Below are positions 4,369 through 22,420 of a stretch of 64,000 nt of DNA, piece after piece. Each line of letters starts with the position of its first letter. Position 1 is the first letter of the stretch. Made by a program: the position numbers and the translations under genes. The stretch is from the IMG/VR virus record IMGVR_UViG_3300010938_000951, positions 202,900 to 266,899 of that record; one strand, 5' to 3'. The notes under the pieces are model-generated. The model worked only from the letters and a program-made list of their open reading frames with translations. It did not search any database and was not told the DNA's origin.

Positions 4369-4718
4369 TAGAAAAGGCTATTAATACTTTCGTATATGCT
4401 CAAATGAGCGTTGAAGCCCTGAAAAAGAATTTCGTACCTAAATACCTGGCGACAGGAGAGCAAAAATTCTATCGCTTTCTAATCCTCTACGCTCTAAATA
4501 AACTAATATATATTGAAAAAGGCTCCTTCAAGGGTAAATCACCCGAGTTGGAGTTTTTAGATTATTATGACCAATTCATAATTTTGTATAGAAGAGAAGG
4601 TGAGGATGTTTATCTTGAGCTAGCCCGAGTATTTAGAAAGGCAGCGCATAAAGTTTATCGAGTTATGTTAAAAAAGAATATGACCGAGAGAAACGCAAAA
4701 TTCCTCAATTTGGTATAA
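4341..4718 (+). CDS. hypothetical protein (more likely start ATG 4404)
   Basis: ORF fills the gap between flanking genes; no motif recognised. Confidence 0.65.
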   Translation: MSDHTQNFLIEKAINTFVYAQMSVEALKKNFVPKYLATGEQKFYRFLILYALNKLIYIEKGSFKGKSPELEFLDYYDQFIILYRREGEDVYLELARVFRKAAHKVYRVMLKKNMTERNAKFLNLV

Positions 4719-4719
4719 T

Positions 4720-5795: not shown

Positions 5796-6581
5796 ATGAC
5801 AGAAGATTTACGTTTGTCGGTTAGCAAGACCAAGACCTTCTTGGATTGTAAAGCTAAGTATAAATTTTGCTACATTGAAAAGTTACCACGAAAAGATTGG
5901 GATTTTCATATTTTTGGTAAGTTTTGCCATAGTGTTTTAGAGTATTTTCATAAACAATATATTGAGGGGTGCTTGTTACCATATAATGTTACTATGAATG
6001 ATGCTTTTAAGCATGCACTTTCTGAATTTAAAGATAAGATGACTCCTGAAATGAAAAAGGAATGTTGGCAAATTATTGACCAATATCTGCGTTTAATTAC
6101 AAAAGATAAACAAAGTGGTATGCCAGCCAACGTAATTGCTGTGGAAAAAAGATTTGATTTTGCCATCGCAGAAAATCTTGTTTTAAACGGAGCAATTGAC
6201 AGGATTCAATTAGATGACGATAATGTTATCCACGTGGCGGACTACAAGACCACCAAACATAAAAAATATTTGAAAAATGATTTCTTCCAACTTTTAACGT
6301 ATGCTTATGTTATAGTGTCCCAAGACCCAACTATAGAAAAAGTTAGAGCATCGTATATTTTACTCAGACACAATTTTGAATATGTAACAACTGAGTTTAA
6401 CAAGGAAGAAATTTTGGCAGTAAAAGATAAATATGAAGAATACGCAAAACAGATGCTTGCAGAAAAGGAGTTCCCTCCTAATCCAACCAACCTCTGTAAT
6501 TACTGCGATTATTTACAAGAATGTCCTGCCGGCAAGAGTAAAGCTTTTGATCAACAAGTTTACGGTGAAGTTAACTGGTAA
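5796..6581 (+). CDS. PD-(D/E)XK RecB/Cas4-like exonuclease with probable Fe-S cluster
   Basis: LSVSK..FLDC, GKFCHSVLE, GAIDRI, DYKT and C-terminal CNYCDYLQEC; ATG 5796 chosen over the track start at 5721. Confidence 0.85.
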   Translation: MTEDLRLSVSKTKTFLDCKAKYKFCYIEKLPRKDWDFHIFGKFCHSVLEYFHKQYIEGCLLPYNVTMNDAFKHALSEFKDKMTPEMKKECWQIIDQYLRLITKDKQSGMPANVIAVEKRFDFAIAENLVLNGAIDRIQLDDDNVIHVADYKTTKHKKYLKNDFFQLLTYAYVIVSQDPTIEKVRASYILLRHNFEYVTTEFNKEEILAVKDKYEEYAKQMLAEKEFPPNPTNLCNYCDYLQECPAGKSKAFDQQVYGEVNW

Positions 6582-6590
6582 GAGGAAACA

Positions 6591-7838
6591 ATGCAAATTG
6601 AAGTAACTGAATTAGAACCATGCAGACTGTCTGTTCACTATGAGGCTAACTTCCTGGAAATCTCTGATAAGAGAGCAGAAGTTGAAAGTGCTTTTAAGAA
6701 AGCTCCTGTACCAGGATTTAGACCAGGTAAAGTACCACCTGAAGCTATTAGAGTTCATTATCGTCAACAGATTGACGACTCTCTAAAGCGCGCGCTTGCA
6801 GAAGATGCATTTCACAATACTCTTTTCGAAAAGAAAATTAGACCACATGGTGCCCCACGTTTTAATAGTTTACTATTAGACGGCGGTAAGTTTACTTGTG
6901 ACTTTGAAATTCTAACCAAGCCCGATTTTGAAGTGCCTGCTTGGAAAGATATGGAAGTCGCAAAGCCACACGGGGAAATGGAAGCGTCTGTTCTAGCCGA
7001 GAAAATGATGCAAGAGTTGCGTGTTCGTTTAGGTGAAGTATCTCCTTATACCGATACTGATTTCGTTCAATCTGGAGACAATGTCATCATTGATTATAAA
7101 GGCACCGTAGATGGTCAAGTTGTTGATAGTCTAGTGGCTGAAGGAGAGATGATTACTATTGGTAATAGCCCATTAGCCGCTTTTGATAACAACTTATTAG
7201 GTATGTCCTTAGATGAAGTCCGTGAATTTGATTTCGTGGCACCTCCACAAGGATTACCATCTTTAGCTGGTAAAACTGTTCACTTTACAGTCACATTGAA
7301 GATGGGCTCTAAGACCGTTCCATGTGCCCTAGATGATGAAATGGCAAAAAAGATGGGTAAAAATACGTTTGAAGAATTACAGGAAACTGTATCTCAAGCA
7401 GCTTTTGCTCGTGCAGCTAATATGAATAAGATGGCAGTTCAAGAAGCAGTAGCTAGAAAACTTATTACTAGTGTTGATATTAAAGTTCCAAATTGGATGT
7501 CTTTATCTGAAGCGCAATATCTAAGCCACCAATCCCAACTAGATTGGAATGCTATGCAAGATTCAGACAGAGAGAAAATGATTGAAATGGCCGAGCAAAA
7601 TGTTAAGTTATCTTTGATTCTAGATAAGATTAGAGAATCTGAGCCGGAAGCACAGCTAACTGACCAGGAAGTGTTTGAAATTATCAAACAAAATTTGGCC
7701 AATACCAAAGTGACGCAAAGTTTAGATGAGGTCATTCAGCAAATGAATAAGACAGGTTATCTACAAATTTTGTTCCAGCGCATTAAAGATGAAAATACTA
7801 TGGATTACATAGTAAAGTCAGTAAAGTTGATTGATTAA
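6591..7838 (+). CDS. tig: trigger factor (ribosome-associated chaperone/PPIase)
   Basis: MQIEVTELEPC start, PGFRPGKVP ribosome-binding signature, FKBP-like GDNVIIDYKGTVDG segment, C-terminal chaperone domain. Confidence 0.9.
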   Translation: MQIEVTELEPCRLSVHYEANFLEISDKRAEVESAFKKAPVPGFRPGKVPPEAIRVHYRQQIDDSLKRALAEDAFHNTLFEKKIRPHGAPRFNSLLLDGGKFTCDFEILTKPDFEVPAWKDMEVAKPHGEMEASVLAEKMMQELRVRLGEVSPYTDTDFVQSGDNVIIDYKGTVDGQVVDSLVAEGEMITIGNSPLAAFDNNLLGMSLDEVREFDFVAPPQGLPSLAGKTVHFTVTLKMGSKTVPCALDDEMAKKMGKNTFEELQETVSQAAFARAANMNKMAVQEAVARKLITSVDIKVPNWMSLSEAQYLSHQSQLDWNAMQDSDREKMIEMAEQNVKLSLILDKIRESEPEAQLTDQEVFEIIKQNLANTKVTQSLDEVIQQMNKTGYLQILFQRIKDENTMDYIVKSVKLID

Positions 7839-9121: not shown

Positions 9122-9243
9122 TGTAAGACCCACACCGTATTCCCTGGCACAGTACACGCAGTCTATCCTTAGATTGAAAATTCCCCTGAGATTGGGTAAG
9201 ATGTACACACGTGTTACAATACACAACCATATCAGGAGGTCAT

Positions 9244-12200
9244 ATGACCGACTTTGTTTCTCTGCATAATCAGACGCAGTTTTCTATTCTTGATTCAATT
9301 ATTACACCAAAGGCCCTTTTCAAACGAGCAAAAGAGTTAGGACAAACAGCGATTGCAGTTACTGATCATGGCTCTTTAGCTGGAGCCTGGGATGCCTGGA
9401 AAGCTTCAAAAGAAACTGGTGTCAAACTTATTATTGGATGCGAGTGTTATTTTCAAGATGATGCATCTAATGTTAATGAAAAGTTCCGCCATATTGTATT
9501 GTTGGCGAAGAATGCCGTTGGATATCGTAATCTTTTGACGTTAAATAAGAAAGGTTTCGATCAGAGTTCTTTTGTAGGTAAGCGCGTTTATTCTGTACTT
9601 GATTGGAAGTTGCTGGAGCAGCATGCTGAGGGTTTAATTTGTTTAACAGCATGTGGTAATGGTATCATCAGCCAACCTATTATGAAGGGTAAAATGGATG
9701 AAGCAGAGAAAACTCTATTGCGACTTAAAGATTTGTTCGGTGATAATTTAGGTATTGAAATTCAGCCTAACAATATGAAGCGCGGTTCAAATATTTTTAA
9801 TGATGAAATCGATCAAGATTTTTTGAACAGACAATTAGTGAAGCTTGGCAAGAAACACAATGTTCGTGTTGTGGCTGCCTGTAATGCTCATTATCTAACT
9901 AAAGAAGATGCGGATGTACATGATGCATTCCTTGCTATTGGTGCGCATCAACCAAAGCATTCTGGTTTTCGTTTAAAGTATCCTGTACCAGAATTTTATC
10001 TCAAAACTGGCGATGAAGTTAAAGAGTTTTTTGCCAGAGTGTATCGCGATGACGCACAAACATTCGTTGACAATTCTGTATATTTTGCTAATCTGTGTGA
10101 AAAGCCTGAGTGGATTGATCCAAAGTTTTCCAATCCATCTGGCAAAGAGCTTCCTGTATTTCCTGTTAAAGATGAACCAGATTATCTGGAATTCCGTGAC
10201 TGGGTTATTCAGCAATCAGAAAGCATTCAAAAATTAGAGGAAGACAAGCTTTTCTTACGTTATCGTTGTATTAAACGTTTTGATTCTCGTGTAAAGAACC
10301 TTACTCCAGAGCAGCGTGAACAATATAATAAACGCATAGAAGAAGAGTTAGATGTTTTAGAGTACCACGGATTCTCCAGCTATATGCTCATTGTAGCAGA
10401 TTTTATAGAATGGGCTAGAAAAAATGAAATTGCTGTTGGTGAAGGCCGCGGCTCTGTTGGTGGTTCACTAGTAGCGTATTTGCTAGGAATCCATCAAGCA
10501 GATCCGATTAAATATAATTTGATTTTTGCTAGATTCCACAACAAAGAGAAGTCCAGCTTCCCTGATATTGATACCGACTTTGCACCGTCTGGTCGTGAAA
10601 AAGTACAAAACTATCTACGCCAGAAATATGGTGAAGATCATGTGGCGCACGTTAGTAACGTAAATACTATTACACCAAAAGTGTATGTTAAAGACATTGC
10701 TCGTATTTTTGAATTTGGCGGCTCTAAAGAGGAGGCGTTTAAGATTGGTAATGAAATCGCTAATTGTATTCCGGCGGAAATTCATTCTATTGAGGATGCA
10801 TTGGCAAAAGTTCCGCTATTTGCGGAATACGCCAAGAAATATCCAGAGTTCGAAAGATACAAGGATATCTGTGGAAAGTACCGTGCTTGGTCCACTCACG
10901 CCGGTGGTATTATCATCTCCGCTCGTCCCCTGACTGGACTTGTTCCACTCAGAAAGGATAAGGATGGAGCACTAGCTATTGAGTATGATAAGGATAAGGC
11001 CGAAGAAAATGGTCTAGTCAAAATGGATACCTTGGGCCTTTCAACTTTAGATATTATTGGCCAAGCTATGAAGCTGATCAAAGAGTCTGGAAAGACTCTT
11101 CCGGAAGATATTAATTATGACGAGTACGATCAAAGTGCTTACGATGTAATTTCAAATGGCGACACTTTCTGTGTCTTTCAGCTTGGAACATCTGGTGGAA
11201 CTATTGATTTGTGCAAACAAATCAAGCCAAGGTCTATCAATGATATTAGTTATATTAACTCACTTGCTCGCCCATCTGCTCGCGATATGAGAAAAGATTT
11301 TATCTTAACCAAAGATGGCAAGAAACCATTCGCACTACTACATCCTACTTTGGGTCGAGCATTTAATAATACATTTGGATTTGGTCTCTACGAAGAGTCT
11401 CTAATGTATTTAGCTCAAGATGTAGCTGGTTGGAGTTTGCACTCTGCTGACCGTTTGCGAAAACTTACGAAGGAAAAAGGTAAGAATCCCAAGAAAGCTC
11501 AAGAATGGCGCGCGGAATTTATTAAAGATGCCATTGCCAACAATGTTAATGAAAATATTGCTAAACGCATTTGGGATGAGGTCGTAGATAAATTCCAGGG
11601 TTATGGTTTTAATATGTCTCACTCTATCTTGTATTCTATGACAAGTTACAAGACAGCATACTTAAAAGCACACTACCCAATTGAATTTTTAATGGCCAAC
11701 TTAATGGCTGAAGTTAAGTCTAATGCACCAGATGCAAAAGGCAATATTGAGAAAATCAAAAAGGAAATTCGTAAACGTAGAGTTAAAATTGTTCCGCCTG
11801 ATATCAATAAATCACAACTCGCTTATACTATCGAAGATGGTAACAAACTAATTACTGGGCTAGATGCTATTAAATTTGTTGGTATTGATGCCATTAAGGA
11901 TATTATTGAGAAACGACCATTTACTAGCTTCTTTGATTTTATGTCTAGAGTTAGTTCGAAAACAGTACGTGCGAATAGTATTCAGGCTTTGGCGGCATGT
12001 GGCGCGCTTGATTCCTTCGGAATTTCTCGTAAGCTAATGTATCTGTATTGTTCAGATTACCGCAAGAAACTACAAGTGTGGCTTAAAAAGCACGATCCAA
12101 CTAAAGAAGAGTTTATTTATCCTTGGCCAGCAGAACCCAATTGGTCTATGCCGGAAATATATGCTTTAGAGCATTATTACCTTGGTGAATCATTTACTTG

Positions 12201-12756
12201 TAAACCTGCGTTAGCGTATGGTAAATTTTTTGATGGTGATGCTGTGACTGTTCAAGAAATTAAACGCATGAAAGATAAGGCCAATGTATCATCAGTGAAA
12301 GGTATTATTCGCGATTTCTTTGAATTCCGTGTTAAAAAAGAGGGCAAGTATTATGGTCAAGCCATGATCAAGGCTGTCATTGAAGACAAGAATGGCGATC
12401 AATGTACTTTAACTATTTTCCCGGATCGTTGGAAAATCGTACAAGAACGAATTCAAGAACTTAACAAAAAAGCCGAATTCGATATAGGTATAGCATTGTT
12501 CTTCTCTGGTAACACGAATTCTTATGAAGACGACATGGGAATCATATTGGATCAATTATACCACATTGCATTACCGCCCTCTCTTCCGGCCGATCTAAAA
12601 GCTAAGAAAATAAACCTTAAAGAGGCAAAAGCTAAGCTTTTCGGAGAAGTACCCGAGGAAAAACCTAAGAGTCCTCAAGAGATACTTGATCAAATAGAGG
12701 ATACTTTATATGATGAGGGTCTTATCGACTTGGATGACGAATCTGAGGATGACTGA
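9244..12756 (+). CDS. dnaE: DNA polymerase III alpha subunit (family C)
   Basis: PHP domain (TDHG, GCECY, CNAHY), GRGSVGGSLVAY, catalytic PDIDTDF, HAGG, KMDTLGL, YGFNMSHS, C-terminal OB fold; GGAGG RBS before ATG 9244; no intein seen. Confidence 0.97.
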   Translation: MTDFVSLHNQTQFSILDSIITPKALFKRAKELGQTAIAVTDHGSLAGAWDAWKASKETGVKLIIGCECYFQDDASNVNEKFRHIVLLAKNAVGYRNLLTLNKKGFDQSSFVGKRVYSVLDWKLLEQHAEGLICLTACGNGIISQPIMKGKMDEAEKTLLRLKDLFGDNLGIEIQPNNMKRGSNIFNDEIDQDFLNRQLVKLGKKHNVRVVAACNAHYLTKEDADVHDAFLAIGAHQPKHSGFRLKYPVPEFYLKTGDEVKEFFARVYRDDAQTFVDNSVYFANLCEKPEWIDPKFSNPSGKELPVFPVKDEPDYLEFRDWVIQQSESIQKLEEDKLFLRYRCIKRFDSRVKNLTPEQREQYNKRIEEELDVLEYHGFSSYMLIVADFIEWARKNEIAVGEGRGSVGGSLVAYLLGIHQADPIKYNLIFARFHNKEKSSFPDIDTDFAPSGREKVQNYLRQKYGEDHVAHVSNVNTITPKVYVKDIARIFEFGGSKEEAFKIGNEIANCIPAEIHSIEDALAKVPLFAEYAKKYPEFERYKDICGKYRAWSTHAGGIIISARPLTGLVPLRKDKDGALAIEYDKDKAEENGLVKMDTLGLSTLDIIGQAMKLIKESGKTLPEDINYDEYDQSAYDVISNGDTFCVFQLGTSGGTIDLCKQIKPRSINDISYINSLARPSARDMRKDFILTKDGKKPFALLHPTLGRAFNNTFGFGLYEESLMYLAQDVAGWSLHSADRLRKLTKEKGKNPKKAQEWRAEFIKDAIANNVNENIAKRIWDEVVDKFQGYGFNMSHSILYSMTSYKTAYLKAHYPIEFLMANLMAEVKSNAPDAKGNIEKIKKEIRKRRVKIVPPDINKSQLAYTIEDGNKLITGLDAIKFVGIDAIKDIIEKRPFTSFFDFMSRVSSKTVRANSIQALAACGALDSFGISRKLMYLYCSDYRKKLQVWLKKHDPTKEEFIYPWPAEPNWSMPEIYALEHYYLGESFTCKPALAYGKFFDGDAVTVQEIKRMKDKANVSSVKGIIRDFFEFRVKKEGKYYGQAMIKAVIEDKNGDQCTLTIFPDRWKIVQERIQELNKKAEFDIGIALFFSGNTNSYEDDMGIILDQLYHIALPPSLPADLKAKKINLKEAKAKLFGEVPEEKPKSPQEILDQIEDTLYDEGLIDLDDESEDD

Positions 12757-12858
12757 TATATAAGACATTAGTTGATAATAAAATGCCCGACAAATCGGGA
12801 AAATGATATAGATGATATCATTTGTATACAAAATCTATGCATAGTAAGGAATGAAGTT

Positions 12859-13803
12859 ATGCCAAAGATAAAGCTAAAGGAATGGGCCGATAGACACAAT
12901 CTGTCTTACATTACCGCAAATAGACATTTCCACGCAGGATTAATTCCTGGGGCTAGTCAGCTTGACTCTGGCACAATTCTTGTAGAGGATGACTCACCGG
13001 AGCAAACTATGGCTGGAACTGCTAGCACAAATGATGCAATGTCTCTCTTTTTAAAGAAAACGGTTGAATTTAGTAAGAATAATTCTTCTGTAGAGGATTT
13101 TGCAGCTTATGTTATCTCGAATTTTAGACTACAATTGAATAATACCACTGAACATTCTCCTAGATATTCAAAAAATAGACCGAAATCAGAAGATGTACAA
13201 AAGCATTTCCAGCAATTTTTGCCAGATAAAGAGTCTCAAGAAAGATTAAAGGAAGTTAAAAACCTTATCAAGGAGGGCAAGCCTGCTGGTGAAGTTATCC
13301 CAGCCGGCCTGTCTCAACAGGCATCTGAACTATCTCAAGTATTAGGAAACGCTCCTCCATTTGAAAGAATTCATCCTGATCCAGATGGTTTAGGAGATGA
13401 ATTTAGACTTATGCTTTCTGAAGCAGCCGCAGGGATGGCTTCAGATGGAAGAACGCCTACTGAAGGTTTGGTATCACGAAGTGTTGATTTTAACACAACT
13501 CCACAACAAATCAACTATACCGGCTCTACAAGCCAAACCTTCAGTAGCACCTCTTCTATAATTGGTGGCATGTCTGTTAATGCTAGTCATTTAGCTGGGG
13601 GCGCCCCATTTGGAGAGGTTAGCACGAATGGAATATTTTTAGCAGCAACGCCAGCATCAGTTTCTGTTCCAGTTACTTTCCAGCCAACTCAAAAAGAATT
13701 ACTATCAGCCACTCAAGTTATAGAAACTGCCGAAGCTGATGATCTTAGTGAAACCAACGAATTCCCACGTAAGCGTGGCAGAAAACCATCCAAGAAGAGA
13801 TAA
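12859..13803 (+). CDS. MerR/IS607-like N-terminal HTH protein with C-terminal AT-hook-like motif
   Basis: KLKEWADRHNLSYITANRHFHAGLIP...SGTILV at the N-terminus and PRKRGRKP at the C-terminus; AAGGA RBS before ATG 12859. Confidence 0.6.
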   Translation: MPKIKLKEWADRHNLSYITANRHFHAGLIPGASQLDSGTILVEDDSPEQTMAGTASTNDAMSLFLKKTVEFSKNNSSVEDFAAYVISNFRLQLNNTTEHSPRYSKNRPKSEDVQKHFQQFLPDKESQERLKEVKNLIKEGKPAGEVIPAGLSQQASELSQVLGNAPPFERIHPDPDGLGDEFRLMLSEAAAGMASDGRTPTEGLVSRSVDFNTTPQQINYTGSTSQTFSSTSSIIGGMSVNASHLAGGAPFGEVSTNGIFLAATPASVSVPVTFQPTQKELLSATQVIETAEADDLSETNEFPRKRGRKPSKKR

Positions 13804-13805
13804 GA

Positions 13806-14825
13806 ATGCAATTACCTAATCGTTTATCTCAGTTGTTACAGAAACAAACTGATAGATTATTAAAAGACCTATTGTCTGAGAATCCTGATGTTCTTAAGAG
13901 TTATGTTAATGGTGGTCTTGCTGCCGTCGGTGCAGTATTAGCGCCAATTAATGTGTTTATGAGGCATTTATTAACAGTTCAGGGACTAGATCCTGATGCT
14001 GTGCCAGGAGAGAAACAAAGGGCATTGATACGGGCAGCTTTCAATAGTACATTTGAAAATAATCACGAAAAAGATTATGATGATGATTATGATGTTTCTT
14101 GGGTTCATAAAAAGTATAATTCTATAAAAGACAAATTCAATGTCACAGAAGATAAGTTTATGGCCCTAACTGATTTGTCAAAATTAGATAATGCCCCTCC
14201 AGTTTTGACAAAAGTAAAATTTGATGAGCTGGTTCAAGATATTAATCCAGTAGCTCCCGAGTCTGAGAAGCGCGAATTGCCTTTAGTTAAAACATATATG
14301 CAAGATGAAATTCAGGCGCTTAAAGAATTTGTGGAGACTATGGATAAACACAGCCAAAAGGCTGGAATTAAAACATCTACTAAAAAAGCCAATAAGGGTA
14401 AGAGGCCAGGCGCTAGAGTTCGTAGGGTAACCAGCTCTACAACCATCAAAGATGAACCAACAACATTAGAAGTGAAGTCTGATCGTGTTGTGCGACCATC
14501 ATCTAAGAAATTGCCAGCTCGTAATTTGAAAGATTTAACCGCACAAAAGAAAGAGAAAGTTAAAGCTATTAAAGAAGCAACCCCTGAATTTCAAGCAGAA
14601 TTAAAAGCAAAATTAGCAAAAGCAACAGAACTAACTAGTCTTATGATAGAAAAGGGACTTTGCAGAGCAGATGATCAATCTCGTAAAGATCAAATTGAAT
14701 CAATGTTGTCTTGGACAGATAATAATTTTGATGCACTAGAAAGAGTAATTAACAAATATTCTCCTACTAAAGATGCAGTGGCTGAGAATAAATTCAAGGG
14801 CTCTTTTAGAAGAGTTCAGAAATAA
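13806..14825 (+). CDS. hypothetical protein with basic central region
   Basis: 339-aa ORF in operon; ends FKGSFRRVQK. Confidence 0.75.
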   Translation: MQLPNRLSQLLQKQTDRLLKDLLSENPDVLKSYVNGGLAAVGAVLAPINVFMRHLLTVQGLDPDAVPGEKQRALIRAAFNSTFENNHEKDYDDDYDVSWVHKKYNSIKDKFNVTEDKFMALTDLSKLDNAPPVLTKVKFDELVQDINPVAPESEKRELPLVKTYMQDEIQALKEFVETMDKHSQKAGIKTSTKKANKGKRPGARVRRVTSSTTIKDEPTTLEVKSDRVVRPSSKKLPARNLKDLTAQKKEKVKAIKEATPEFQAELKAKLAKATELTSLMIEKGLCRADDQSRKDQIESMLSWTDNNFDALERVINKYSPTKDAVAENKFKGSFRRVQK

Positions 14826-14832
14826 GGTACAA

Positions 14833-15288
14833 ATGCCAATTAGACGTGTTCAACAACAATCAGACAGAGGAAGTATTCGTGATTTGCAAAATGGAGATGA
14901 CGAAAAGTATCCTCCAACTGACTACGAATTACGCGTAAAAGAATTGTATGAACACGCTTTGGTTACTAAAAATCAAGCCTTAGTTGACTCCCTGGGCTTG
15001 ATTCCAATTAATGGTTCTGCTAATGATCCAGTTTCTATTTTTAGACACCGTGAATATATAAAGTCTCTTAGTTCAGAACTGGCGGATAAAATACAACAGA
15101 CAGCTAAAGAGATTGAAGGTTGTTTACATGTGGATGAAACGTCTTTGCCACAAGAAGTTAAGTGGTCTAGATATAAACAGGCTCATTCTTTGGCGGCTAT
15201 TTGTGAGGATATTGATATAGTTAAAGTGGCAAGTGCTGATGGTGGTACTTATACTAGAGCGAAAAGAAGTTTTAGAAGGGTAATCTAA
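14833..15288 (+). CDS. hypothetical protein
   Basis: AAGGT RBS before ATG 14833; ends KRSFRRVI. Confidence 0.7.
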   Translation: MPIRRVQQQSDRGSIRDLQNGDDEKYPPTDYELRVKELYEHALVTKNQALVDSLGLIPINGSANDPVSIFRHREYIKSLSSELADKIQQTAKEIEGCLHVDETSLPQEVKWSRYKQAHSLAAICEDIDIVKVASADGGTYTRAKRSFRRVI

Positions 15289-16121
15289 TGAAGTGTGTAT
15301 CCTGCGAAACAGAAATTAATCCAAAATGGAAGCATGCGATAGACATAAATGTGTGTCCATTCTGTGGTAAACATATCATGGAAGAGCATCTTAAAAATTG
15401 TCTAACTACTTTGGCTGCTGCCATGGATGCTATGTTAAAATATCCTGAGCAGTTAGATGATTGGCTATTGTCAAATCATAATTATATCAAAACGGATTCT
15501 CCTAATCTGAAACAGTTTCTTCCCAAAGAGGCTTTTAAAGAAATTCGTAAAGAGCTTGATGAGCAAGAGTTTCAGGAAAAGAAAAAATCTATCGTCAAAA
15601 TTAAAGTACCTACTGACGACGGTGATATTGTGGAACAAGAAGTGGTTGTCGAGAAGATGGTTACTGATGACAGGACTCAAACATTCCATGATCGCGCAAA
15701 CAATATGTTGAAGCAAGAGAAAGCCGTGGATGGTGACCCTAAAAGTGTCGCCGCAAAAACTAGGGATCTTAAAGCGATGGCAGAAAAAATCAAGCGAGAA
15801 GTTGCCGCGCAAGCGGAAGGTGGTATGGCACCTATGATCAGCAAAGAGATGATGGCCGAAGCAGATCCAGAAGCTGTACGAGAATTTCAGTCCATGATTG
15901 CTTCTGGTGATATAGTGTCTTCAAGTTTGCCTGCTGCCGCTGATGGTGATGATGACGATATTCCAGATGTTGTATTGGCTATGGCTAATATGAAAAAATC
16001 TGGATCTAAAGATGGTGGGGCTAACGAAAAAGATTTACATGCATTAGCAAAAATGCAAGCTAAAGCGCAGGGAGCTTCTAAACGATTGGGTTCTGGTAAA
16101 GGAAGTTTTTCAAGGGGATAA
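15288..16121 (+). CDS. N-terminal Zn-ribbon protein
   Basis: CVSC...CPFC; ends GKGSFSRG. Confidence 0.7.
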   Translation: MKCVSCETEINPKWKHAIDINVCPFCGKHIMEEHLKNCLTTLAAAMDAMLKYPEQLDDWLLSNHNYIKTDSPNLKQFLPKEAFKEIRKELDEQEFQEKKKSIVKIKVPTDDGDIVEQEVVVEKMVTDDRTQTFHDRANNMLKQEKAVDGDPKSVAAKTRDLKAMAEKIKREVAAQAEGGMAPMISKEMMAEADPEAVREFQSMIASGDIVSSSLPAAADGDDDDIPDVVLAMANMKKSGSKDGGANEKDLHALAKMQAKAQGASKRLGSGKGSFSRG

Positions 16122-16124
16122 ACC

Positions 16125-16430
16125 ATGGCAGTCAGAGTCGTTGACAATAAGAAACTGGAAATGACAGATGATGAATGGGATATGTACCAAAAAATCTGCA
16201 AATCATATACAGATATGACGGGTAAGGGCGAAGACCTTTTCATGGATCTTTTTGAGACTAACGATGATGGAATTATTGTTTTTCTAAAGCCGCCCTCTAA
16301 AAGAAGAACGAGCTTAGAAGTATTTTTATTTTTGATGTCATTAATGCAACACCAACATTTACGATTAATGCACCAACAAATTGATGAAGCAGTGGCCGAA
16401 ATAAAGAAAAACAATAAGGCCACTAAATAA
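16125..16430 (+). CDS. hypothetical protein
   Basis: ORF in operon with RBS-like GGGG upstream. Confidence 0.7.
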   Translation: MAVRVVDNKKLEMTDDEWDMYQKICKSYTDMTGKGEDLFMDLFETNDDGIIVFLKPPSKRRTSLEVFLFLMSLMQHQHLRLMHQQIDEAVAEIKKNNKATK

Positions 16431-16484
16431 TTATTTGTCGAGAAAAAGTTCGCATAATTCAATTTAACAGGGAGAAAGACAAAC

Positions 16485-16994
16485 ATGAGCCAACCAGTAA
16501 GACTAGGCGATGTTTTAGGTTCTAACCTTGAGGAAGATTTCAAGAATTTCGACCTCACGGAAATTCAAAAAGTATTAGAACAGCTAAGGGATGCAGATGC
16601 TATTGATTTGGCACATGCAGAGCTTTTACAACAACAAGCATTAAGGGGAGCAGATATCTTAGCAGATTATCTAGCTAAGATGGTAAAGACAGTAGCGTAT
16701 CTAGAATCGAAAGTGAATAGTACGAAGAATAAAGTGTCCTTAGATTATGTTGCGCCAGATGGCTCAAGAACGACAGTGGACATGAAGAAATGGGCAGGAG
16801 AATCATCGCCCGAAGTCGAAGCAGTACAAATAAAATTAGCAGAAGCCAAGGGCGGTAAGATGGCCCTGGACCGAAAATACGAGATTTTAATCAAAGCTCA
16901 CCACCATTTTAAAGATATTGCGGGCGGGCTTCGAAAGACGATCCTCGGTTATAGTTCAGGGGCTGGCAACGCACCTGGCGAAGGCTACGAATAA
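16485..16994 (+). CDS. helical protein, possible UvsY-like recombination mediator
   Basis: Coiled-coil character, size and position immediately before recA; function is inference only. Confidence 0.4.
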   Translation: MSQPVRLGDVLGSNLEEDFKNFDLTEIQKVLEQLRDADAIDLAHAELLQQQALRGADILADYLAKMVKTVAYLESKVNSTKNKVSLDYVAPDGSRTTVDMKKWAGESSPEVEAVQIKLAEAKGGKMALDRKYEILIKAHHHFKDIAGGLRKTILGYSSGAGNAPGEGYE

Positions 16995-17005: not shown

Positions 17006-18205
17006 ATGTCAGATGATAAGAAAAAGAAAGCCGATAAGCTAACCGCATTTTTCCGAAGTTTCGCAGATGCAGACGCTCAGCTAGACGTTAGACTTGCCCA
17101 TGAAACCGTGGGAGAAAAGTTGCCAGTCATTTCGACGGGCTCATTAGCTCTTGATGATGCACTTTCATCCGGTGGATTGCCAAAAGGTAGATTAATTCAA
17201 TATTATGGCGCTCCTGGTAGCGGTAAAACTTTGATGACCATGTTGGCAATCAAAGAAGCACAACTTCAAGATCCAACATCTCAACAAATGTTTATTGATG
17301 CTGAAGGTACTTTTGATGCCAAATGGGCAGAGACTTTAGGGTTAGATTCATCTAGAATTATTGTTGTTGACGGTGAAACGGCTGTTATTGGTCGTAACTG
17401 TTTTGAGATGATTCTTGGCGTTCCAAAAGAAGACAAAAAGACTCATGAGCTAGTCGGCAAATCGAAACAAGGCTTGCTCGATATGATTATGGCAGGAGAG
17501 TTTAATATCAATATGGTTGTATTAGACTCACTTGGTGCCATTATTCCACCAGGCGAAGATGTTTCGGTTGTTGGAAAGATGAATATGGCCTTATTGGCAA
17601 GGTTCTTAACTACTACTTTCCGTAAGCTTTCTCTTGATGCAAATAGAGCGCAAGTGCCATTTATTTTCATCAATCACAAGAAAGCTAATATGGATCCTTA
17701 TGGTGTGGACCATTCGTTCTCTGGCGGAAATACTTATGCTCACTTCTTGAGCGCTAACGTTTACTTTGAAGCGGTAGCACGTGCAGATGCACAAATCTTG
17801 GATGAAAAAGAGCAAAAGGTCGGACATACGATGCGTGCAACCATTGAAAAATCGAAGTTTGGCCCTTACCCACGTAAGTGCGAATTCAAAGTTAACTTCG
17901 GAATCGGCGTTATAGATAAGCACGAAGAAATCGCACAATTAGCTGTTGATTACAATGTAATTGTAAAGACCTCTACTGTAACCCATGAATATGGCGATCA
18001 GAAATGGGTCGGATTCAACAAAGTGTGTGAAGCTATTAAAGACAATCCTGCATTAGCTGAGGAGTTGGTTGTTAAAATTGGCCAAGCTCGTGAAGCAAAG
18101 TGGGATGCAGCCCGCAAGGAACAAGAGGCAAAAAAAGCCAGTGTAACTGCCAGTGATGATGCTGGTCTTGAAGTAGAATCAAAAAAGAGTAAGAAAGGTA
18201 AGTAA
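17006..18205 (+). CDS. recA: RecA/UvsX recombinase
   Basis: ISTGSLALDDALSSGGLPKGRLIQYYG, Walker A GAPGSGKT, FIDAEG, VVLDSL, FINH, GGN. Confidence 0.95.
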   Translation: MSDDKKKKADKLTAFFRSFADADAQLDVRLAHETVGEKLPVISTGSLALDDALSSGGLPKGRLIQYYGAPGSGKTLMTMLAIKEAQLQDPTSQQMFIDAEGTFDAKWAETLGLDSSRIIVVDGETAVIGRNCFEMILGVPKEDKKTHELVGKSKQGLLDMIMAGEFNINMVVLDSLGAIIPPGEDVSVVGKMNMALLARFLTTTFRKLSLDANRAQVPFIFINHKKANMDPYGVDHSFSGGNTYAHFLSANVYFEAVARADAQILDEKEQKVGHTMRATIEKSKFGPYPRKCEFKVNFGIGVIDKHEEIAQLAVDYNVIVKTSTVTHEYGDQKWVGFNKVCEAIKDNPALAEELVVKIGQAREAKWDAARKEQEAKKASVTASDDAGLEVESKKSKKGK

Positions 18206-19795: not shown

Positions 19796-20368
19796 ATGGT
19801 TAAAACGGTCTTAGGATTCGACGCATCGAGTACGACTATTGGTTATTCTATATTAAGTTGGGACGAAACAACAAATAATATAGCCTTTGTCAAAGCCGGC
19901 TACATTAAACCAAAGAAGACAGGATCTATTATTGAAAGAATAGTAGATACTAGAAATCAGGTTCAAAAAGTTATTGTTGATGCTAAACCTGATTATATTT
20001 CAATTGAAGAGATTATTCAATTTATGAAAGGCAAAAGCACAGCAAAAACTATTATTATGTTGACTACATTTAATAGGATGATTTGTTTAACGGCTTATGA
20101 TTATCTTGGTAAAGAACCTACTCTTTATAGTGTTATGACTATTCGTCATGGATTAAAGACCACCAAAGATTTACCAAAAAAAGAAGATATGCCGGCCCTT
20201 GTCGCCCAACATTTAGGAATTACGTTTCCCTACGAGTATAATAAGAAGGGCGGCATTAAAATCGAAAGCTATGACAAAGCTGACGGTGTTGCAGTGGCCC
20301 TTTATCACGCATTGGCCTTATCGGGCAAGGTGAAATCTAAAGGAAAGTCTAAAGGCAAGAAGAAATGA
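19796..20368 (+). CDS. RuvC-like Holliday junction resolvase
   Basis: VLGFDASSTTIGY, ISIEE and DKADGVAVA acidic catalytic motifs of the RNase H/RuvC fold. Confidence 0.8.
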   Translation: MVKTVLGFDASSTTIGYSILSWDETTNNIAFVKAGYIKPKKTGSIIERIVDTRNQVQKVIVDAKPDYISIEEIIQFMKGKSTAKTIIMLTTFNRMICLTAYDYLGKEPTLYSVMTIRHGLKTTKDLPKKEDMPALVAQHLGITFPYEYNKKGGIKIESYDKADGVAVALYHALALSGKVKSKGKSKGKKK

Positions 20369-21294
20369 ATTTAAAGGAAGCCTACGCAATTTTAGAATTG
20401 TCTCCCGGTGCCACGCCAGAGGAAGTCAAGAAGAAGTACCGAGAACTTACTAAAAAATATCACCCTGACATAAATAAAGAGCCGGGAGCAGAAGAGAAGT
20501 TCAAGAAAATTAATGAAGCTCATGAAGTTGTCAAGACTGGTAAAAGTACTGATTTACAGGATCGTATGCCAAGACAGGGAGGGTTTCATCGTCAACAGCA
20601 ATTCATTCAATTAGAAAATGTTGAAATGTTTACAACTATTTCTTTCAAGGAATCTGTTTTAGGTTGTAAGAAAGAGATTAAATATGATCGTCAAACCAAA
20701 TGCCAAAATTGTAATGGTCAAGGTGAAATAAGACTCCATAATGGCTGCAAAAAATGTGGTGGGCGAGGGCAGATTACTACTCGGCAAGGAAATATGATAG
20801 TTATGACCACTTGTGATGAGTGTTATGGTCGTTCTAATGTATCAACCTGTGATGTATGTAGTGGTAATGGTACCGTCCAGGCGCACGCATCTGTGCACGT
20901 GTCTATACCTGCGGGTATTGTAAATGGCAATACATTGCGATTGCAGGGTATGGGAAATTTTGCCGGCTCTTTTATGGGTCTAGCTGATCAATATACAGAT
21001 GCATTTTTGCATGTAGCAGTTACTCCAGAGCCTGGATTATCTTTAGATGGGCAAAATGTAATAAGTACGCTTACTATTTCGTTATTAGATGCATTGCGTG
21101 GCTGTAAACGTATGGTGAAAACCATTCATGGTGAAAAAGAAATTCAAATTAAACCGCAATCCAGAAATCATGATGAGGTAATTATTCCTCATCATGGGGT
21201 AAATAATATGGGTAATCAAAAGGTTATTTTGGATGTAGAATACCCTAAGAATACTGATAAATTGATTAGTGTTCTATTAGATGAGGTAGTATAA
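20365..21294 (+). CDS. dnaJ: DnaJ (class A Hsp40) co-chaperone
   Basis: J domain with HPD, four CxxCxGxG-type Zn repeats, C-terminal substrate-binding domain. Confidence 0.93.
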   Translation: MNLKEAYAILELSPGATPEEVKKKYRELTKKYHPDINKEPGAEEKFKKINEAHEVVKTGKSTDLQDRMPRQGGFHRQQQFIQLENVEMFTTISFKESVLGCKKEIKYDRQTKCQNCNGQGEIRLHNGCKKCGGRGQITTRQGNMIVMTTCDECYGRSNVSTCDVCSGNGTVQAHASVHVSIPAGIVNGNTLRLQGMGNFAGSFMGLADQYTDAFLHVAVTPEPGLSLDGQNVISTLTISLLDALRGCKRMVKTIHGEKEIQIKPQSRNHDEVIIPHHGVNNMGNQKVILDVEYPKNTDKLISVLLDEVV

Positions 21295-21656
21295 TGCCAC
21301 TTGCATTACATTGTACGAATACGCACATAGATAAATTTGGAAAAAAGAAAACTTGCGGTCAAGTTGAGCCATATATGGATCCAAAGACTGAACAGGTATT
21401 TTGTCCGTTATGCGATAATGAAATGCCGAATGTGACGCATTTTACAAAAGTTACCTTAAAAAATCTTAAACAATTTCGTACTAAACCACAAATTCCATTT
21501 GGCGTTAAGTGCCAAAATTGCGGGAAAGAAGCACAACCACAAATTGTAGGCGACGATATAGTGTGTCCTGGGTGTGCAAAACCTCATTCTCATTTAAGCG
21601 AGCCTTTCAAGCTTATGTTGAAAGATAAGCTACGAACCGTAAATAAAGACGTATAA
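21294..21656 (+). CDS. double Zn-ribbon protein
   Basis: C...C, CPLC, CQNC and CPGC pairs; TAATG-coupled on both sides. Confidence 0.75.
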   Translation: MPLALHCTNTHIDKFGKKKTCGQVEPYMDPKTEQVFCPLCDNEMPNVTHFTKVTLKNLKQFRTKPQIPFGVKCQNCGKEAQPQIVGDDIVCPGCAKPHSHLSEPFKLMLKDKLRTVNKDV

Positions 21657-22420
21657 TGCTGGAAAAGATAGTTGAATCTTGCCGATTTTTGCTAAATAGC
21701 TATCCGGACGCGCGGCCTAGCAAGTCCTATCTTGATTCGCGCCTTAGTGATAAAAGCCAAGAGCTTTTTCAGTTTGGCTATTTTCCTGGCGTACAAAATA
21801 TGTCGGTGTTAACAGATTTAGTAGGTGAAGAGGCCCTTGCCAAAGAAAAGCTTCTATTTTCTAAGGAAATAGAAGATTCGTTATTTCCACGTAAAGTGCA
21901 GTATTGTTATTTTGAGGATTATCCCTTGGTAATGCCTTTTAAAGATCCTTATGGTAAGGTTGTTGGCCTAGTAGGTAGGACACTTTTGCCCGATAAGGAA
22001 CAAAAGGAAAAGGGAATTTCTAAATACAAAAATACTAAATTTGAAAAGGGTAATTTTCTTTTTGGTCTTTATGAAAACAAACAGTCTATTTTAGACCGGG
22101 GATTTGTTTATATTGTAGAGGGTCAAATAGATGTAATTAAGGCTTCAGAAGTAGGATTAAGAAATATTGTAGCTTTAGGAAATTCTAATATGACTTCCTA
22201 TCAATTTTCAGTCATTAGCAGATACTCTAATAACATATTTTTGCTATTAGATAATGACGAAGCGGGTCAAAAAGGGAGGAAACGGATCGTTAATAAGTTT
22301 GGGCAATTTGCCAATATTCGTAATTTTTACTTACCTGACGACTACAAAGATATAGATGAATACATCACTAAACGAGGAATTAGTGATCAGGGAGAGCTAT
22401 CTTTTGGTGTCAAAGATTGA
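21656..22420 (+). CDS. dnaG: DnaG-type primase catalytic core (no Zn-binding domain)
   Basis: MPFKDPYGKVVGLVGR, KYKNT, TOPRIM IVEGQIDV and LDNDEAG, KDIDEY. Confidence 0.88.
   Translation: MLEKIVESCRFLLNSYPDARPSKSYLDSRLSDKSQELFQFGYFPGVQNMSVLTDLVGEEALAKEKLLFSKEIEDSLFPRKVQYCYFEDYPLVMPFKDPYGKVVGLVGRTLLPDKEQKEKGISKYKNTKFEKGNFLFGLYENKQSILDRGFVYIVEGQIDVIKASEVGLRNIVALGNSNMTSYQFSVISRYSNNIFLLLDNDEAGQKGRKRIVNKFGQFANIRNFYLPDDYKDIDEYITKRGISDQGELSFGVKD

What the first reader, a model, noticed from the sequence alone, without database searches (positions are those of the whole stretch)
13806..16121. Three consecutive unrelated genes share a C-terminal K-[GR]-S-F-[RS]-R tag
The C-termini are ...FKGSFRRVQK* (14825), ...AKRSFRRVI* (15288) and ...GKGSFSRG* (16121), although the proteins are otherwise dissimilar. 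This looks like a short linear docking, degron or phospho motif recruiting three early proteins to one partner, analogous to SSB-tail or clamp-binding peptides. An alternative is partial DNA constraint, since AAGGG/AAGGGG could serve as the RBS of the next gene, but that does not explain the S-F codons.
Basis: partly seen in the sequence, partly recalled or inferred. Interest (0 to 1): 0.6.

Follow-up and report, generated by a model that had tools for sequence, protein, structure and literature searches.

The report
Shared docking tail, three phage proteins
Three neighbouring, otherwise unrelated genes of an uncultured ~490-kb phage end in the same short, strongly conserved peptide; it most resembles the strand by which RecA-type recombinases grip one another, so it probably tethers these proteins to the recombinase encoded next door, but binding has not been shown.

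Summary
The three ORFs end in FKGSFRRVQK, AKRSFRRVI and GKGSFSRG. SF[RS]R occurs only four times in the 424-ORF genome fragment, always within 10 residues of a C-terminus. The tails are the best-conserved part of each family: P3 120/120 homologues, P1 67/68, P2 84/86. P3 and P1 keep them through synonymous and codon-family changes and variable spacing to the next gene. That refutes the RBS explanation for P1 and P3; the P2 tail does overlap the P3 RBS. The families are otherwise unrelated and largely disordered. P2 carries a second copy at its N-terminus, and distance to the C-terminus varies, so a C-degron is unlikely.

Best reading (confidence 0.4): a portable recombinase-docking peptide. 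Its invariant positions G-x-G-x-Phe-x-Arg coincide with the RecA polymerisation motif (E. coli G22-K-G-S-I26-M-R28). In P3 a helix precedes it, as in RecA. A RecA-family gene lies 2-3 genes downstream in all 33 related loci, and DnaE lies upstream. Precedents are the RecA-NT motif of UmuC/ImuB and BRC/FxxA repeats.

The similarity is short and statistically modest. The one complex prediction gave no verdict. The partner is therefore inferred, not shown.

The parts
13806..14825 (+). P1, 339 aa, ORFan family, mostly low-confidence/disordered
   Evidence: No Pfam or PHROG family hit beyond one far-below-cut-off Pfam match. ESM Atlas model pLDDT 0.42. 68 homologues, all from metagenomic huge-phage contigs.
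14793..14816 (+). P1 tail motif F-K-G-S-F-R-R-V (residues 330-337)
   Evidence: G332 and F334 invariant, F330 and R336 >=90% in A3. 67 of 68 homologues carry F-x-G-[SPV]-F-[RK]-R 1-7 aa from the end. Codons vary synonymously and spacing to the next gene varies.
14833..15288 (+). P2, 151 aa, helical core with disordered ends
   Evidence: AF2 mean pLDDT 66, with residues 1-9 and 137-151 below 50. No PDB fold match.
14833..14850 (+). P2 N-terminal copy M-P-I-R-R-V (family: M-P-[IFY]-R-[RT]-V)
   Evidence: Conserved across 86 homologues. Same hydrophobic-R-R-V pattern as the C-terminal tail.
15262..15285 (+). P2 tail motif K-R-S-F-R-R-V-I (residues 144-151); its last codons double as the RBS of P3
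   Evidence: F147 and R149 invariant, V150 >=90%. 84 of 86 homologues have SF[RKTW]R. AGAAGGGTAATCTAATG is nearly invariant at DNA level.
15288..16121 (+). P3, 277 aa: N-terminal CxxC...CxxC zinc-ribbon domain, long acidic low-confidence middle, C-terminal helix plus tail
   Evidence: phrog_4875 (unknown function) matches residues 1-48. 377 homologues, none annotated.
15288..15581 (+). P3 N-terminal domain (residues 1-98), confidently folded, no known fold found
   Evidence: pLDDT about 82-91. Foldseek and VIA-align found nothing significant.
16023..16091 (+). P3 C-terminal helix (residues 246-268) directly preceding the tail
   Evidence: AF2 secondary structure, pLDDT up to about 79. hhalign aligns it with the RecA N-terminal helix.
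16095..16118 (+). P3 tail motif G-K-G-S-F-S-R-G (residues 270-277)
   Evidence: G270, F274 and R276 invariant, G272 and S275 >=90% in 84 sequences with mean column identity 46%. 120 of 120 homologues carry the motif. Ser uses TCN and AGY, Arg uses AGR and CGN, and the next ATG is 1-25+ nt away.
17006..18205 (+). RecA-family recombinase, the proposed docking target; own presumed polymerisation motif Q-L-D-V-R-L-A-H-E at residues 25-33
   Evidence: Pfam RecA 1.5e-32, phrog_97 UvsX-like 1.4e-53. PDB RecA chains E about 1e-30 versus UvsX 9e-15. The gapless alignment anchored on ISTGSL puts V28 (F or Y in most relatives) opposite E. coli Ile26.
9211..12756 (+). DnaE-type (C-family) DNA polymerase, conserved upstream neighbour with acidic tail ...LYDEGLIDLD...
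   Evidence: tblastn hits annotated DNA polymerase III alpha in phage records. Synteny across loci.
12772..13803 (+). P0: conserved neighbour with AT-hook-like tail P-R-K-R-G-R-K-P-S-K-K-R (likely true start ATG at 12859)
   Evidence: Tail conserved in nearly all loci. Context only; it does not carry the motif.
16125..16994 (+). Two small conserved genes between P3 and the recombinase (101 aa; 169 aa ending P-[GE]-E-G-Y-E)
   Evidence: No family or PDB hit. The 169-aa gene sits where T4-like phages have uvsY; this is inference from position only.

Best explanation
The tails are a portable recombinase-docking peptide. It is a phage version of the RecA-family 'polymerisation motif', the short strand whose hydrophobic residue plugs into a pocket on the neighbouring protomer.

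P1, P2 and P3 are largely disordered adaptor-like proteins. Each would use the tail (G-x-Phe-x-Arg-small/aliphatic) to occupy the free protomer-interface pocket of a RecA-family ATPase. The likeliest target is the phage RecA/UvsX-like protein encoded 2-3 genes downstream; the host RecA is possible instead or as well. Docking would tether their other domains (the P3 zinc ribbon, the P2 helical core) to recombinase monomers or filament ends.

Given the conserved order DnaE - P0..P3 - recombinase, the likely purpose is to couple strand invasion to replication, or to control filament growth. P2, with a copy at each end, could bridge two protomers.

Shown: the motif, its protein-level selection, its sharing by unrelated families, and the synteny. 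Inferred: the partner, the pocket and the consequence.
For: (1) Invariant tail positions map onto the invariant positions of the RecA motif. E. coli RecA reads F-G-K-G-S-I-M-R-L, against P3 G-K-G-S-F-S-R, P1 F-K-G-S-F-R-R-V and P2 K-R-S-F-R-R-V. Ile26 is the polymerisation residue, replaced by Phe in RadA/Rad51/Dmc1 and mimicked by BRC repeats (PMC2672939).

It hits E. coli RecA exactly at K23-R28.

(3) hhalign of the P3 family against RecA residues 1-50, and against a 68-sequence RecA N-terminal profile, places its single best local alignment on the P3 C-terminal helix plus tail (E 0.087 and 0.041). AF2 gives helix 246-268 followed by the tail, the same helix-then-strand layout as RecA-NT.

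(4) A position matrix built from the tails ranks GKGSIMRL 2nd of 346 windows in RecA.

(5) The phage recombinase's own motif is D-[FYV]-[RK]-[LMF]-A, an FxxA type aligned with Ile26. It resembles S-F-R-R-[VA].

(6) All 33 related loci have a RecA-family gene 2-3 genes after P3, of two different subtypes, and DnaE lies before P0 wherever the locus extends that far upstream.

(7) Precedent: RecA-NT-like motifs in C-terminal extensions of UmuC, YqjW, UvrX and ImuB (PMC6511836). The ImuB motif is experimentally required for binding the RecA homologue ImuA' in the ImuA'-ImuB-DnaE2 cassette (PMC11791113). E. coli UmuC shows G-R-G-T-L-Y-F-A after a helix.
Against: The similarity covers only about 7 residues and is statistically modest. 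A full RecA-NT HMM does not retrieve P1-P3 from the phage proteomes. A BLOSUM profile of the RecA strand ranks the P3 tail 8th of 81,176 windows, and the P1 and P2 tails are not in the top 12. With the RecA-NT profile, the best hhalign matches for P1 and P2 are not at their tails.

No Pfam DUF4113 or other family hit was found. I reached RecA after considering several other motif classes from memory, so a look-elsewhere discount applies.

The P3 tail is unchanged whichever of the two recombinase subtypes is present. That fits a very conserved target such as host RecA, or a non-recombinase partner.

The single complex prediction returned no verdict, so it counts neither for nor against. No binding experiment exists.
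Confidence: 0.4

Rival explanations
1. The tails are a docking motif, but for a different hub. Candidates include the phage DnaB-type helicase, the DnaE polymerase (whose conserved acidic tail could pair with the basic tails), a chaperone (the phage encodes DnaJ and trigger factor) or a host protein.
For: Everything that shows a shared, selected linear motif applies equally. DnaE with a conserved acidic tail is the immediate upstream neighbour. DnaJ and trigger factor are in the window. DnaB is present in complete relatives. The P3 tail does not co-vary with recombinase subtype.
Against: No sequence resemblance to known helicase-, clamp-, SSB- or chaperone-binding peptides was found. RecA is the only known motif whose invariant positions match those of the tails.
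Confidence: 0.3
2. The tails are small nucleic-acid-binding modules (basic plus aromatic, RGG-like), giving three proteins affinity for ssDNA or RNA rather than for a protein.
For: Composition is K/R-rich with one aromatic residue. The P3 tail is Gly-rich (for example R-G-K-G-G-F-S-R-S-G in relatives). The proteins sit in a replication/recombination module.
Against: Strict invariance of single positions (G, G, F, R) and of their spacing over 30-100% identity is more typical of pocket docking than of diffuse electrostatic binding. Neighbouring proteins have generic K-rich tails that vary freely.
Confidence: 0.12
3. The tails are a C-terminal degradation or adaptor signal (a ClpX-type basic C-motif or SspB XB-like peptide), timing removal of three proteins.
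For: C-terminal location. Basic residues followed by aliphatic ones (R-R-V-I) recall, from memory only, MuA-type ClpX tags and the SspB L-R-V-V-K tail.
Against: The conserved positions are internal (G-x-F-x-R), while the last 1-8 residues vary in length and identity. A natural variant seen in three metagenomes extends the P3 tail by 7 residues. P2 has an N-terminal copy.
Confidence: 0.08
4. The tails are a DNA-level constraint (RBS of the next gene) or a meaningless relic of gene duplication.
For: The P2 tail codons overlap the P3 RBS and are nearly invariant at DNA level. The genes are adjacent.
Against: The P3 and P1 tails persist through synonymous and codon-family switches, and with intergenic gaps up to about 50 nt. 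The families share no other similarity. The tail is the most conserved block in each family, not a decaying relic.
Confidence: 0.03

Closest known systems
RecA-NT-like motif in C-terminal extensions of bacterial Y-family polymerases (UmuC, YqjW, UvrX, ImuB; N-terminal part of Pfam DUF4113)
   Same: A short helix-plus-strand copy of the RecA N-terminal oligomerisation motif, placed in the C-terminal region of an unrelated protein. It docks that protein onto RecA or a RecA homologue (PMC6511836; shown experimentally for ImuB-ImuA', PMC11791113). It also sits in a cassette with a C-family polymerase (DnaE2) and a RecA homologue.
   Different: Here the carriers are three phage ORFan families with no polymerase domain. 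The motif is at the very C-terminus and uses Phe rather than Ile/Leu/Val. Only the strand part is clearly similar in P1 and P2. There is no DUF4113 hit. Binding is untested.
BRC repeats / FxxA motifs of BRCA2 and other RAD51 partners
   Same: A partner protein mimics the recombinase's own Phe-containing polymerisation motif and occupies the protomer-interface pocket (abstracts listed). Several unrelated partners reuse the same motif. The phage recombinase's own motif is FxxA-type, D-[FY]-[RK]-x-A.
   Different: These are eukaryotic, with no homology to P1-P3. The tails have Arg at +2 and a variable small or aliphatic residue at +3 instead of strict Ala. A second (LFDE-like) module was not looked for.
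The RecA N-terminal polymerisation motif itself (E. coli residues 21-29)
   Same: The pattern G-K-G-S-hydrophobic-x-R, preceded by a helix.
   Different: In RecA it is N-terminal and part of the recombinase. Here it is C-terminal on other proteins. A full-length RecA-NT HMM does not detect them.
SSB C-terminal tail and beta-clamp-binding peptides
   Same: The principle: one short terminal peptide recruits many unrelated proteins to one hub.
   Different: SSB tails are acidic (D-D-D-I-P-F) and clamp peptides are Q-L-[SD]-L-F (from established knowledge); these tails are basic G-S-F-R-R. No beta clamp or Pfam SSB was detected in complete relatives.

Membership tests
RecA-NT-like motif (Y-family polymerase type, DUF4113) | Detectable homology to the RecA N-terminal helix plus strand | tested here: inconclusive
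   P3: the best hhalign local alignment falls on its C-terminal helix plus tail (E 0.087 against E. coli RecA 1-50; E 0.041 against a 68-sequence RecA-NT profile). For P1 and P2 the best matches are not at their tails. hmmsearch with the RecA-NT HMM does not retrieve any of the three.
RecA-NT-like motif (Y-family polymerase type, DUF4113) | Match to Pfam DUF4113 | tested here: not met
   Pfam scan of P1, P2 and P3 at E <= 0.1 gave no such hit.
RecA-NT-like motif (Y-family polymerase type, DUF4113) | Conserved Gly turn and hydrophobic strand residue at RecA positions 22, 24 and 26, plus Arg28 | tested here: met
   P3 invariants G270, G272, F274 and R276. P1 invariants G332, F334 and R336. P2 invariants F147 and R149, against the E. 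coli RecA sequence.
RecA-NT-like motif (Y-family polymerase type, DUF4113) | Physical binding to RecA or a RecA homologue at the protomer interface | not testable with these tools
   The one complex prediction returned no verdict. No experiment exists.
RecA-NT-like motif (Y-family polymerase type, DUF4113) | Genomic association with a RecA-family gene | tested here: met
   33 of 33 loci have a RecA-family gene 2-3 genes downstream of P3.
BRC / FxxA motif | Phe-x-x-Ala core | tested here: inconclusive
   Phe is invariant. Position +3 is A, S, G, T, V or I, not strictly Ala.
BRC / FxxA motif | Second downstream module (LFDE type) and BRCA2 context | not tested
   The tails end 1-8 residues after the motif, so no downstream module can exist. 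Upstream modules were not examined.
Beta-clamp-binding peptide | Q-L-[SD]-L-F-like sequence and a clamp to bind | tested here: not met
   The tail sequences do not fit. There was no DNA_pol3_beta N-terminal-domain hit in the window's genome or in five related records, four of them 97-100% complete, and no C-terminal-domain hit in the window's genome.
SSB-type acidic tail | Acidic C-terminal D-D-D-I-P-F-like peptide | tested here: not met
   The tails are basic. P3 does have an internal conserved D-D-D-[DE]-I-P at residues about 220-226.
C-terminal degron | Dependence on the extreme C-terminal residues or free carboxylate | tested here: not met
   The motif lies 1-8 residues from the end, with variable terminal residues. 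A 7-residue extension variant exists. P2 has an N-terminal copy.

The most novel reading that the evidence does not exclude
Huge phages have evolved their own BRC-like system. A portable Phe-x-Arg 'polymerisation-motif mimic' is appended to several unrelated, disordered adaptor proteins. These dock on RecA-family protomer interfaces to couple a DnaE replisome to recombinase filaments (recombination-dependent replication), or to cap host RecA filaments and so blunt SOS or RecA-dependent defence. This would be the first viral example of recombinase control by protomer-interface mimicry, and one of several 'tail codes' used by this phage clade.
Probability: 0.35. Interest if true: 0.75.

Novelty: new variant of a known kind. 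Interest (0 to 1): 0.6.

Why it matters
If the tails dock on a RecA-family protomer interface, control of recombinases by polymerisation-motif mimicry would be shown in viruses too. It is already known from BRCA2-RAD51 in eukaryotes and UmuC/ImuB-RecA/ImuA' in bacteria. Three large ORFan families (about 70 to about 380 homologues each, all unannotated) would also gain a testable role.

It would supply a minimal natural peptide, about 8 residues, for probing or blocking RecA-type filament assembly. It would also suggest how ~490-kb phages that carry DnaE but no recognisable clamp or SSB organise recombination-dependent replication.

Independently of the partner, the locus is a clean example of a selected short linear motif in phage proteins. 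Together with the second tag noticed in this clade (...LKAFW), it suggests that terminal peptide 'addresses' are a general organising principle there.

Tried and rejected
- **Complex prediction.** The result was no verdict, so it counts neither for nor against binding.
- **Family scans.** Pfam and PHROG scans of P1-P3 and their neighbours gave no informative family; P3 residues 1-48 matched only phrog_4875, of unknown function.
- **ESM Atlas.** Nothing useful was returned.
- **Folds.** AF2 models of P3 and P2 gave no significant match by Foldseek against the PDB or, for P3, by VIA-align wide.
- **PDB sequence searches.** phmmer of the P3 last 45 aa against the PDB found no hits. The 169-aa neighbour gave no UvsY or other meaningful hit, so its uvsY-like role rests on position only.
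- **Cultured relatives.** blastn and tblastn against 50,697 phage records found no relatives of P1 or P3. DnaE found only relatives at about 30% identity.
- **Prokaryote genomes.** A scan of 185,579 genomes found no P3 relative, so the host remains unknown.
- **Clamp, SSB, helicase.** No clamp or SSB was found; DnaB is present in complete relatives.
- **Unbiased RecA scans.** hmmsearch of the three phage proteomes with a RecA-NT HMM did not retrieve P1-P3. The BLOSUM profile scan gave only rank 8 for P3.
- **Motifs recalled from memory and rejected as poorer fits.** These were the FtsZ C-terminal peptide, MinD/FtsA membrane-targeting helices, PDZ ligands, the SspB XB peptide, ClpX C-motif 2, the T4 gp32 LAST motif, encapsulin cargo-loading peptides and DnaK-binding cores.
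Full report
**Setting**

The window is the last 64 kb of a 266,899-bp IMG/VR virus record, 39% G+C, with genes almost all on the + strand. CheckV rates the record 62% complete. An identical copy of the middle protein lies on a 490,849-bp contig. The nearest complete relatives are 452-481 kb. So this is a fragment of an uncultured ~490-kb 'huge' phage.

It has no close relative among 50,697 deposited phage records. P3 has no relative in 185,579 prokaryote genomes.

The finding sits in a replication/recombination module. In order, the genes are:
- Mre11/SbcD-like and Rad50/SbcC-like
- dNMP kinase
- a PD-(D/E)XK nuclease
- trigger factor
- DnaE-type polymerase (9211-12756)
- P0 (12772-13803)
- P1 (13806-14825), P2 (14833-15288) and P3 (15288-16121)
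- two small genes
- a RecA-family recombinase (17006-18205)
- RuvC-like, DnaJ, a zinc-ribbon ORF and a DnaG-type primase core

**The observation**

The only correction is that P2 starts at 14833; homologues all begin MPIRRV.

In a greedy set of 424 ORFs (84,144 aa) from the whole record, SF[RS]R occurs four times. All four lie within 10 residues of a C-terminus, which has a probability of about 1e-5. Three of them are these consecutive genes. The fourth is a 316-aa protein outside the window, whose ...G-S-F-R-R-V-E-Q-P-Q-V-F-D-R-F end is also conserved.

Profile-profile comparison finds nothing in common between the three families except the tail.

**Protein-level or DNA-level?**

One scan of IMG/VR with P3 returned 33 syntenic loci at 30-85% identity.

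- **P3.** Across these loci the motif G-x-G-x-F-S-R is kept. Ser is written TCT, TCA, TCC or AGT; Arg is AGA, AGG, CGA, CGC or CGG; Gly uses all four codons; Phe uses both. The next start codon lies from 1 to more than 25 nt downstream, with its own RBS.
- **P1.** The same holds, including loci with 40-50 nt gaps.
- **P2.** The last codons (AGA AGG GTA) are nearly invariant at DNA level and sit 5-13 nt before the P3 ATG. Here the RBS constraint is real and is added to the protein constraint. The upstream Ser still switches AGT/TCT, and Arg-to-Trp variants keep a GGAG.

In larger samples, 120 of 120 P3 homologues, 67 of 68 P1 homologues and 84 of 86 P2 homologues carry the motif, 1-8 residues from the end. 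The single P1 exception is the N-terminal half of a split gene.

The motif holds the invariant columns of each alignment:
- P3: G270, F274 and R276 invariant; G272 and S275 >=90%; mean column identity 46%.
- P1: G332 and F334 invariant; F330 and R336 >=90%; mean column identity 32%.
- P2: F147 and R149 invariant; V150 >=90%.

**What the carriers look like**

P1 is predicted mostly disordered.

P2 is a modest-confidence helical protein with disordered ends. Its N-terminus, M-P-[IFY]-R-[RT]-V, repeats the hydrophobic-R-R-V pattern of its own tail. The motif therefore works at either terminus and does not need a free carboxylate.

P3 has three parts: a confidently folded N-terminal zinc-ribbon domain (residues 1-98), a long acidic low-confidence middle, and a C-terminal helix (246-268) followed directly by the tail.

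None of the folds matches a solved structure.

A structured or helical module, a flexible linker and a short invariant terminal peptide make up the architecture of proteins that dock on a hub.

**Which hub?**

The invariant pattern G-x-G-x-Phe-x-Arg coincides with the polymerisation motif of bacterial RecA. The E. coli protein, translated here from the K-12 record, reads ...E-K-Q-F-G-K-G-S-I-M-R-L-G.... Ile26 of that strand docks in a hydrophobic pocket of the neighbouring protomer. It is Phe in RadA, Rad51 and Dmc1, and BRC repeats of BRCA2 bind Rad51 by imitating it (PMC2672939).

The supporting tests were:
- hhalign of the 84-sequence P3 alignment against RecA residues 1-50 puts its only local alignment on A-S-K-R-L-G-S-G-K-G-S-F-S-R-G versus I-E-K-Q-F-(gap)-G-K-G-S-I-M-R-L-G-E-D (E 0.087).
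- Against a profile of 68 distinct RecA N-termini fetched here, the alignment lengthens into the preceding helix (19 columns, E 0.041).
It hits RecA exactly at K23-R28.
- A matrix built from the tails ranks G-K-G-S-I-M-R-L second of 346 RecA windows, despite its Ile.

The phage recombinase is closer to bacterial RecA than to T4 UvsX. In a gapless alignment anchored on I-S-T-G-S-L, it carries Q-L-D-[FYV]-[RK]-[LMF]-A-H-E with the aromatic residue opposite Ile26. That is an FxxA-type motif, which the tails S-F-R-R-[VA] also resemble.

Every one of the 33 loci has a RecA-family gene 2-3 genes after P3. Four loci have a divergent 334-aa subtype paired with a different small upstream gene.

**Precedent**

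Timinskas and Venclovas found a RecA-NT-like helix-plus-strand motif in the C-terminal extensions of UmuC, YqjW, UvrX and ImuB. They proposed that it binds RecA or ImuA in the manner of a neighbouring protomer (PMC6511836).

For ImuB this was later shown experimentally: two hydrophobic residues of the motif are required for binding the RecA homologue ImuA' (PMC11791113). E. coli UmuC, translated here, shows ...A-K-E-G-R-G-T-L-Y-F-A-G... after a helix.

The ImuA'-ImuB-DnaE2 cassette consists of a RecA homologue, an adaptor with RecA-NT and a C-family polymerase. The conserved order here, DnaE - P0..P3 - recombinase, parallels it.

**Mechanism proposed (inferred)**

Each tail inserts its Phe into the protomer-interface pocket of a recombinase monomer, or of the protomer at the filament end whose pocket is free. 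Arg at +2 and the preceding Gly turn would play the roles of RecA R28 and G22/G24.

This would tether the P3 zinc-ribbon domain, the P2 helical core and P1 to the recombinase. P2, being bivalent, could bridge two protomers.

Depending on stoichiometry, the outcome would be one of three things:
- delivery of factors to filaments, coupling strand invasion to the DnaE replisome
- chaperoning of monomers, as BRC repeats do
- capping of filament growth

The P3 tail does not change with recombinase subtype. The preceding K-G-S matches bacterial RecA better than it matches the phage enzyme. Host RecA therefore remains a live alternative target.

**Weaknesses**

- The resemblance spans about seven residues.
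- An unbiased hmmsearch of the phage proteomes with a full RecA-NT HMM does not find P1-P3.
- A BLOSUM profile of the RecA strand ranks the P3 tail only 8th of 81,176 windows and does not rank P1 or P2 highly.
- With the RecA-NT profile, the best hhalign matches of P1 and P2 lie elsewhere. For P2 the match is an internal segment, A-L-x-x-S-L-G-L-I ... P-V-S-I-[FY]-R (E 0.008), which AF2 models as helical.
- I reached RecA after weighing several other motif classes from memory, so the nominal probabilities need a discount.
- There is no DUF4113 hit.
- The single complex prediction returned no verdict, and no binding experiment exists.

I therefore put 0.4 on recombinase docking and 0.3 on docking to some other hub. 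The remainder is split among nucleic-acid binding, a degradation signal and DNA-level or relic explanations. The last is refuted for P1 and P3.

**Verdict**

The best-supported identity is a new, viral variant of the known 'recombinase polymerisation-motif mimic' (RecA-NT-like motif, BRC/FxxA), carried by three ORFan families. It is not a demonstrated member of DUF4113 or of the BRC family.

Noticed in passing
G000 genome 72052-72279 and 84276-84719 (outside the window); G001 21458-21826, 69467-69700, 109261-110075, 341970-342317, 350562-350837, 409126-409566; five in G003; L032:9278-9724: A second shared C-terminal tag. At least 14 small, scattered proteins in three related genomes end in [RK]-x-x-[NK]-[LM]-K-A-F-[WLT]. 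14 of 17 occurrences of [LM]KAF are at the extreme C-terminus. This looks like another terminal 'address' peptide in this phage clade.
   Followed up: partly
window 14833-14850 and about 14962-15057: P2 has a conserved N-terminal M-P-[IFY]-R-[RT]-V that mirrors its C-terminal S-F-R-R-V. It also has an internal conserved A-L-x-x-S-L-G-L-I ... P-V-S-I-[FY]-R-H-R-E, which gives its best hhalign match to the RecA N-terminal helix (E 0.008), although AF2 models the second part as helix.
   Followed up: partly
window about 15945-15965 (P3 residues about 220-226): P3 contains a conserved internal acidic D-D-D-[DE]-I-P, reminiscent of the bacterial SSB C-terminal tail. No Pfam SSB was found in this or complete related genomes.
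   Followed up: no
window 12700-12756, 13765-13803, 16975-16994, 18180-18205, 20340-20368: Other conserved terminal tails occur in the same module. DnaE ends in an acidic L-Y-D-E-G-L-I-D-L-D... tail. P0 ends in the AT-hook-like P-R-K-R-G-R-K-P-S-K-K-R. The 169-aa protein ends in P-E-G-[YW]-[ED]. The recombinase and the RuvC-like protein end in K-rich tails.
   Followed up: no
G000 genome 92370-93320 (L035:6371-7321); L036-L041: A fourth protein (316 aa, His-rich, no Pfam hit) carries Q-G-S-F-R-R-V 10 residues from its end, within a larger conserved C-terminal block. It lies in an NAD-salvage-like region. Whether it uses the same partner is unknown. A 68-aa protein in G001 (350189-350395) ends R-G-T-F-R-R-V-T.
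   Followed up: partly
L004, L005, L006 (three metagenomes, identical), positions 4518-5535 and 6001-6813: A natural variant: P1 is split into two overlapping ORFs (240 + 127 aa), and a 1-nt deletion removes the P3 stop. The P3 motif is then followed by 7 extra residues that run over the start of the next gene.
   Followed up: partly
L012, L013, L014, L029 versus all other loci, downstream of P3: At the same position the clade uses one of two alternative cassettes. One is a 169-aa protein plus a ~400-aa RecA-like recombinase. The other is a 140-aa protein plus a divergent 334-aa RecA-family protein with an acidic W-containing tail. This looks like a module swap.
   Followed up: partly
window 6591-7838 and 20365-21294: The phage encodes a full trigger factor (N, FKBP and C domains) and a full DnaJ (J, Cys-rich and C-terminal domains) inside its replication/recombination module.
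   Followed up: no
window 21294-22420: The DnaG-type primase (254 aa) has only the catalytic core and Toprim domains. A separate 120-aa zinc-ribbon ORF lies immediately upstream, possibly a split-off zinc-binding domain.
   Followed up: no
whole record and relatives G001-G005: These 430-490-kb phages carry a DnaE-type polymerase and a DnaB-type helicase, but no detectable beta-clamp N-terminal domain or Pfam SSB. IMG/VR labels several of them 'provirus', although no relative of P3 exists in 185,579 prokaryote genomes.
   Followed up: partly
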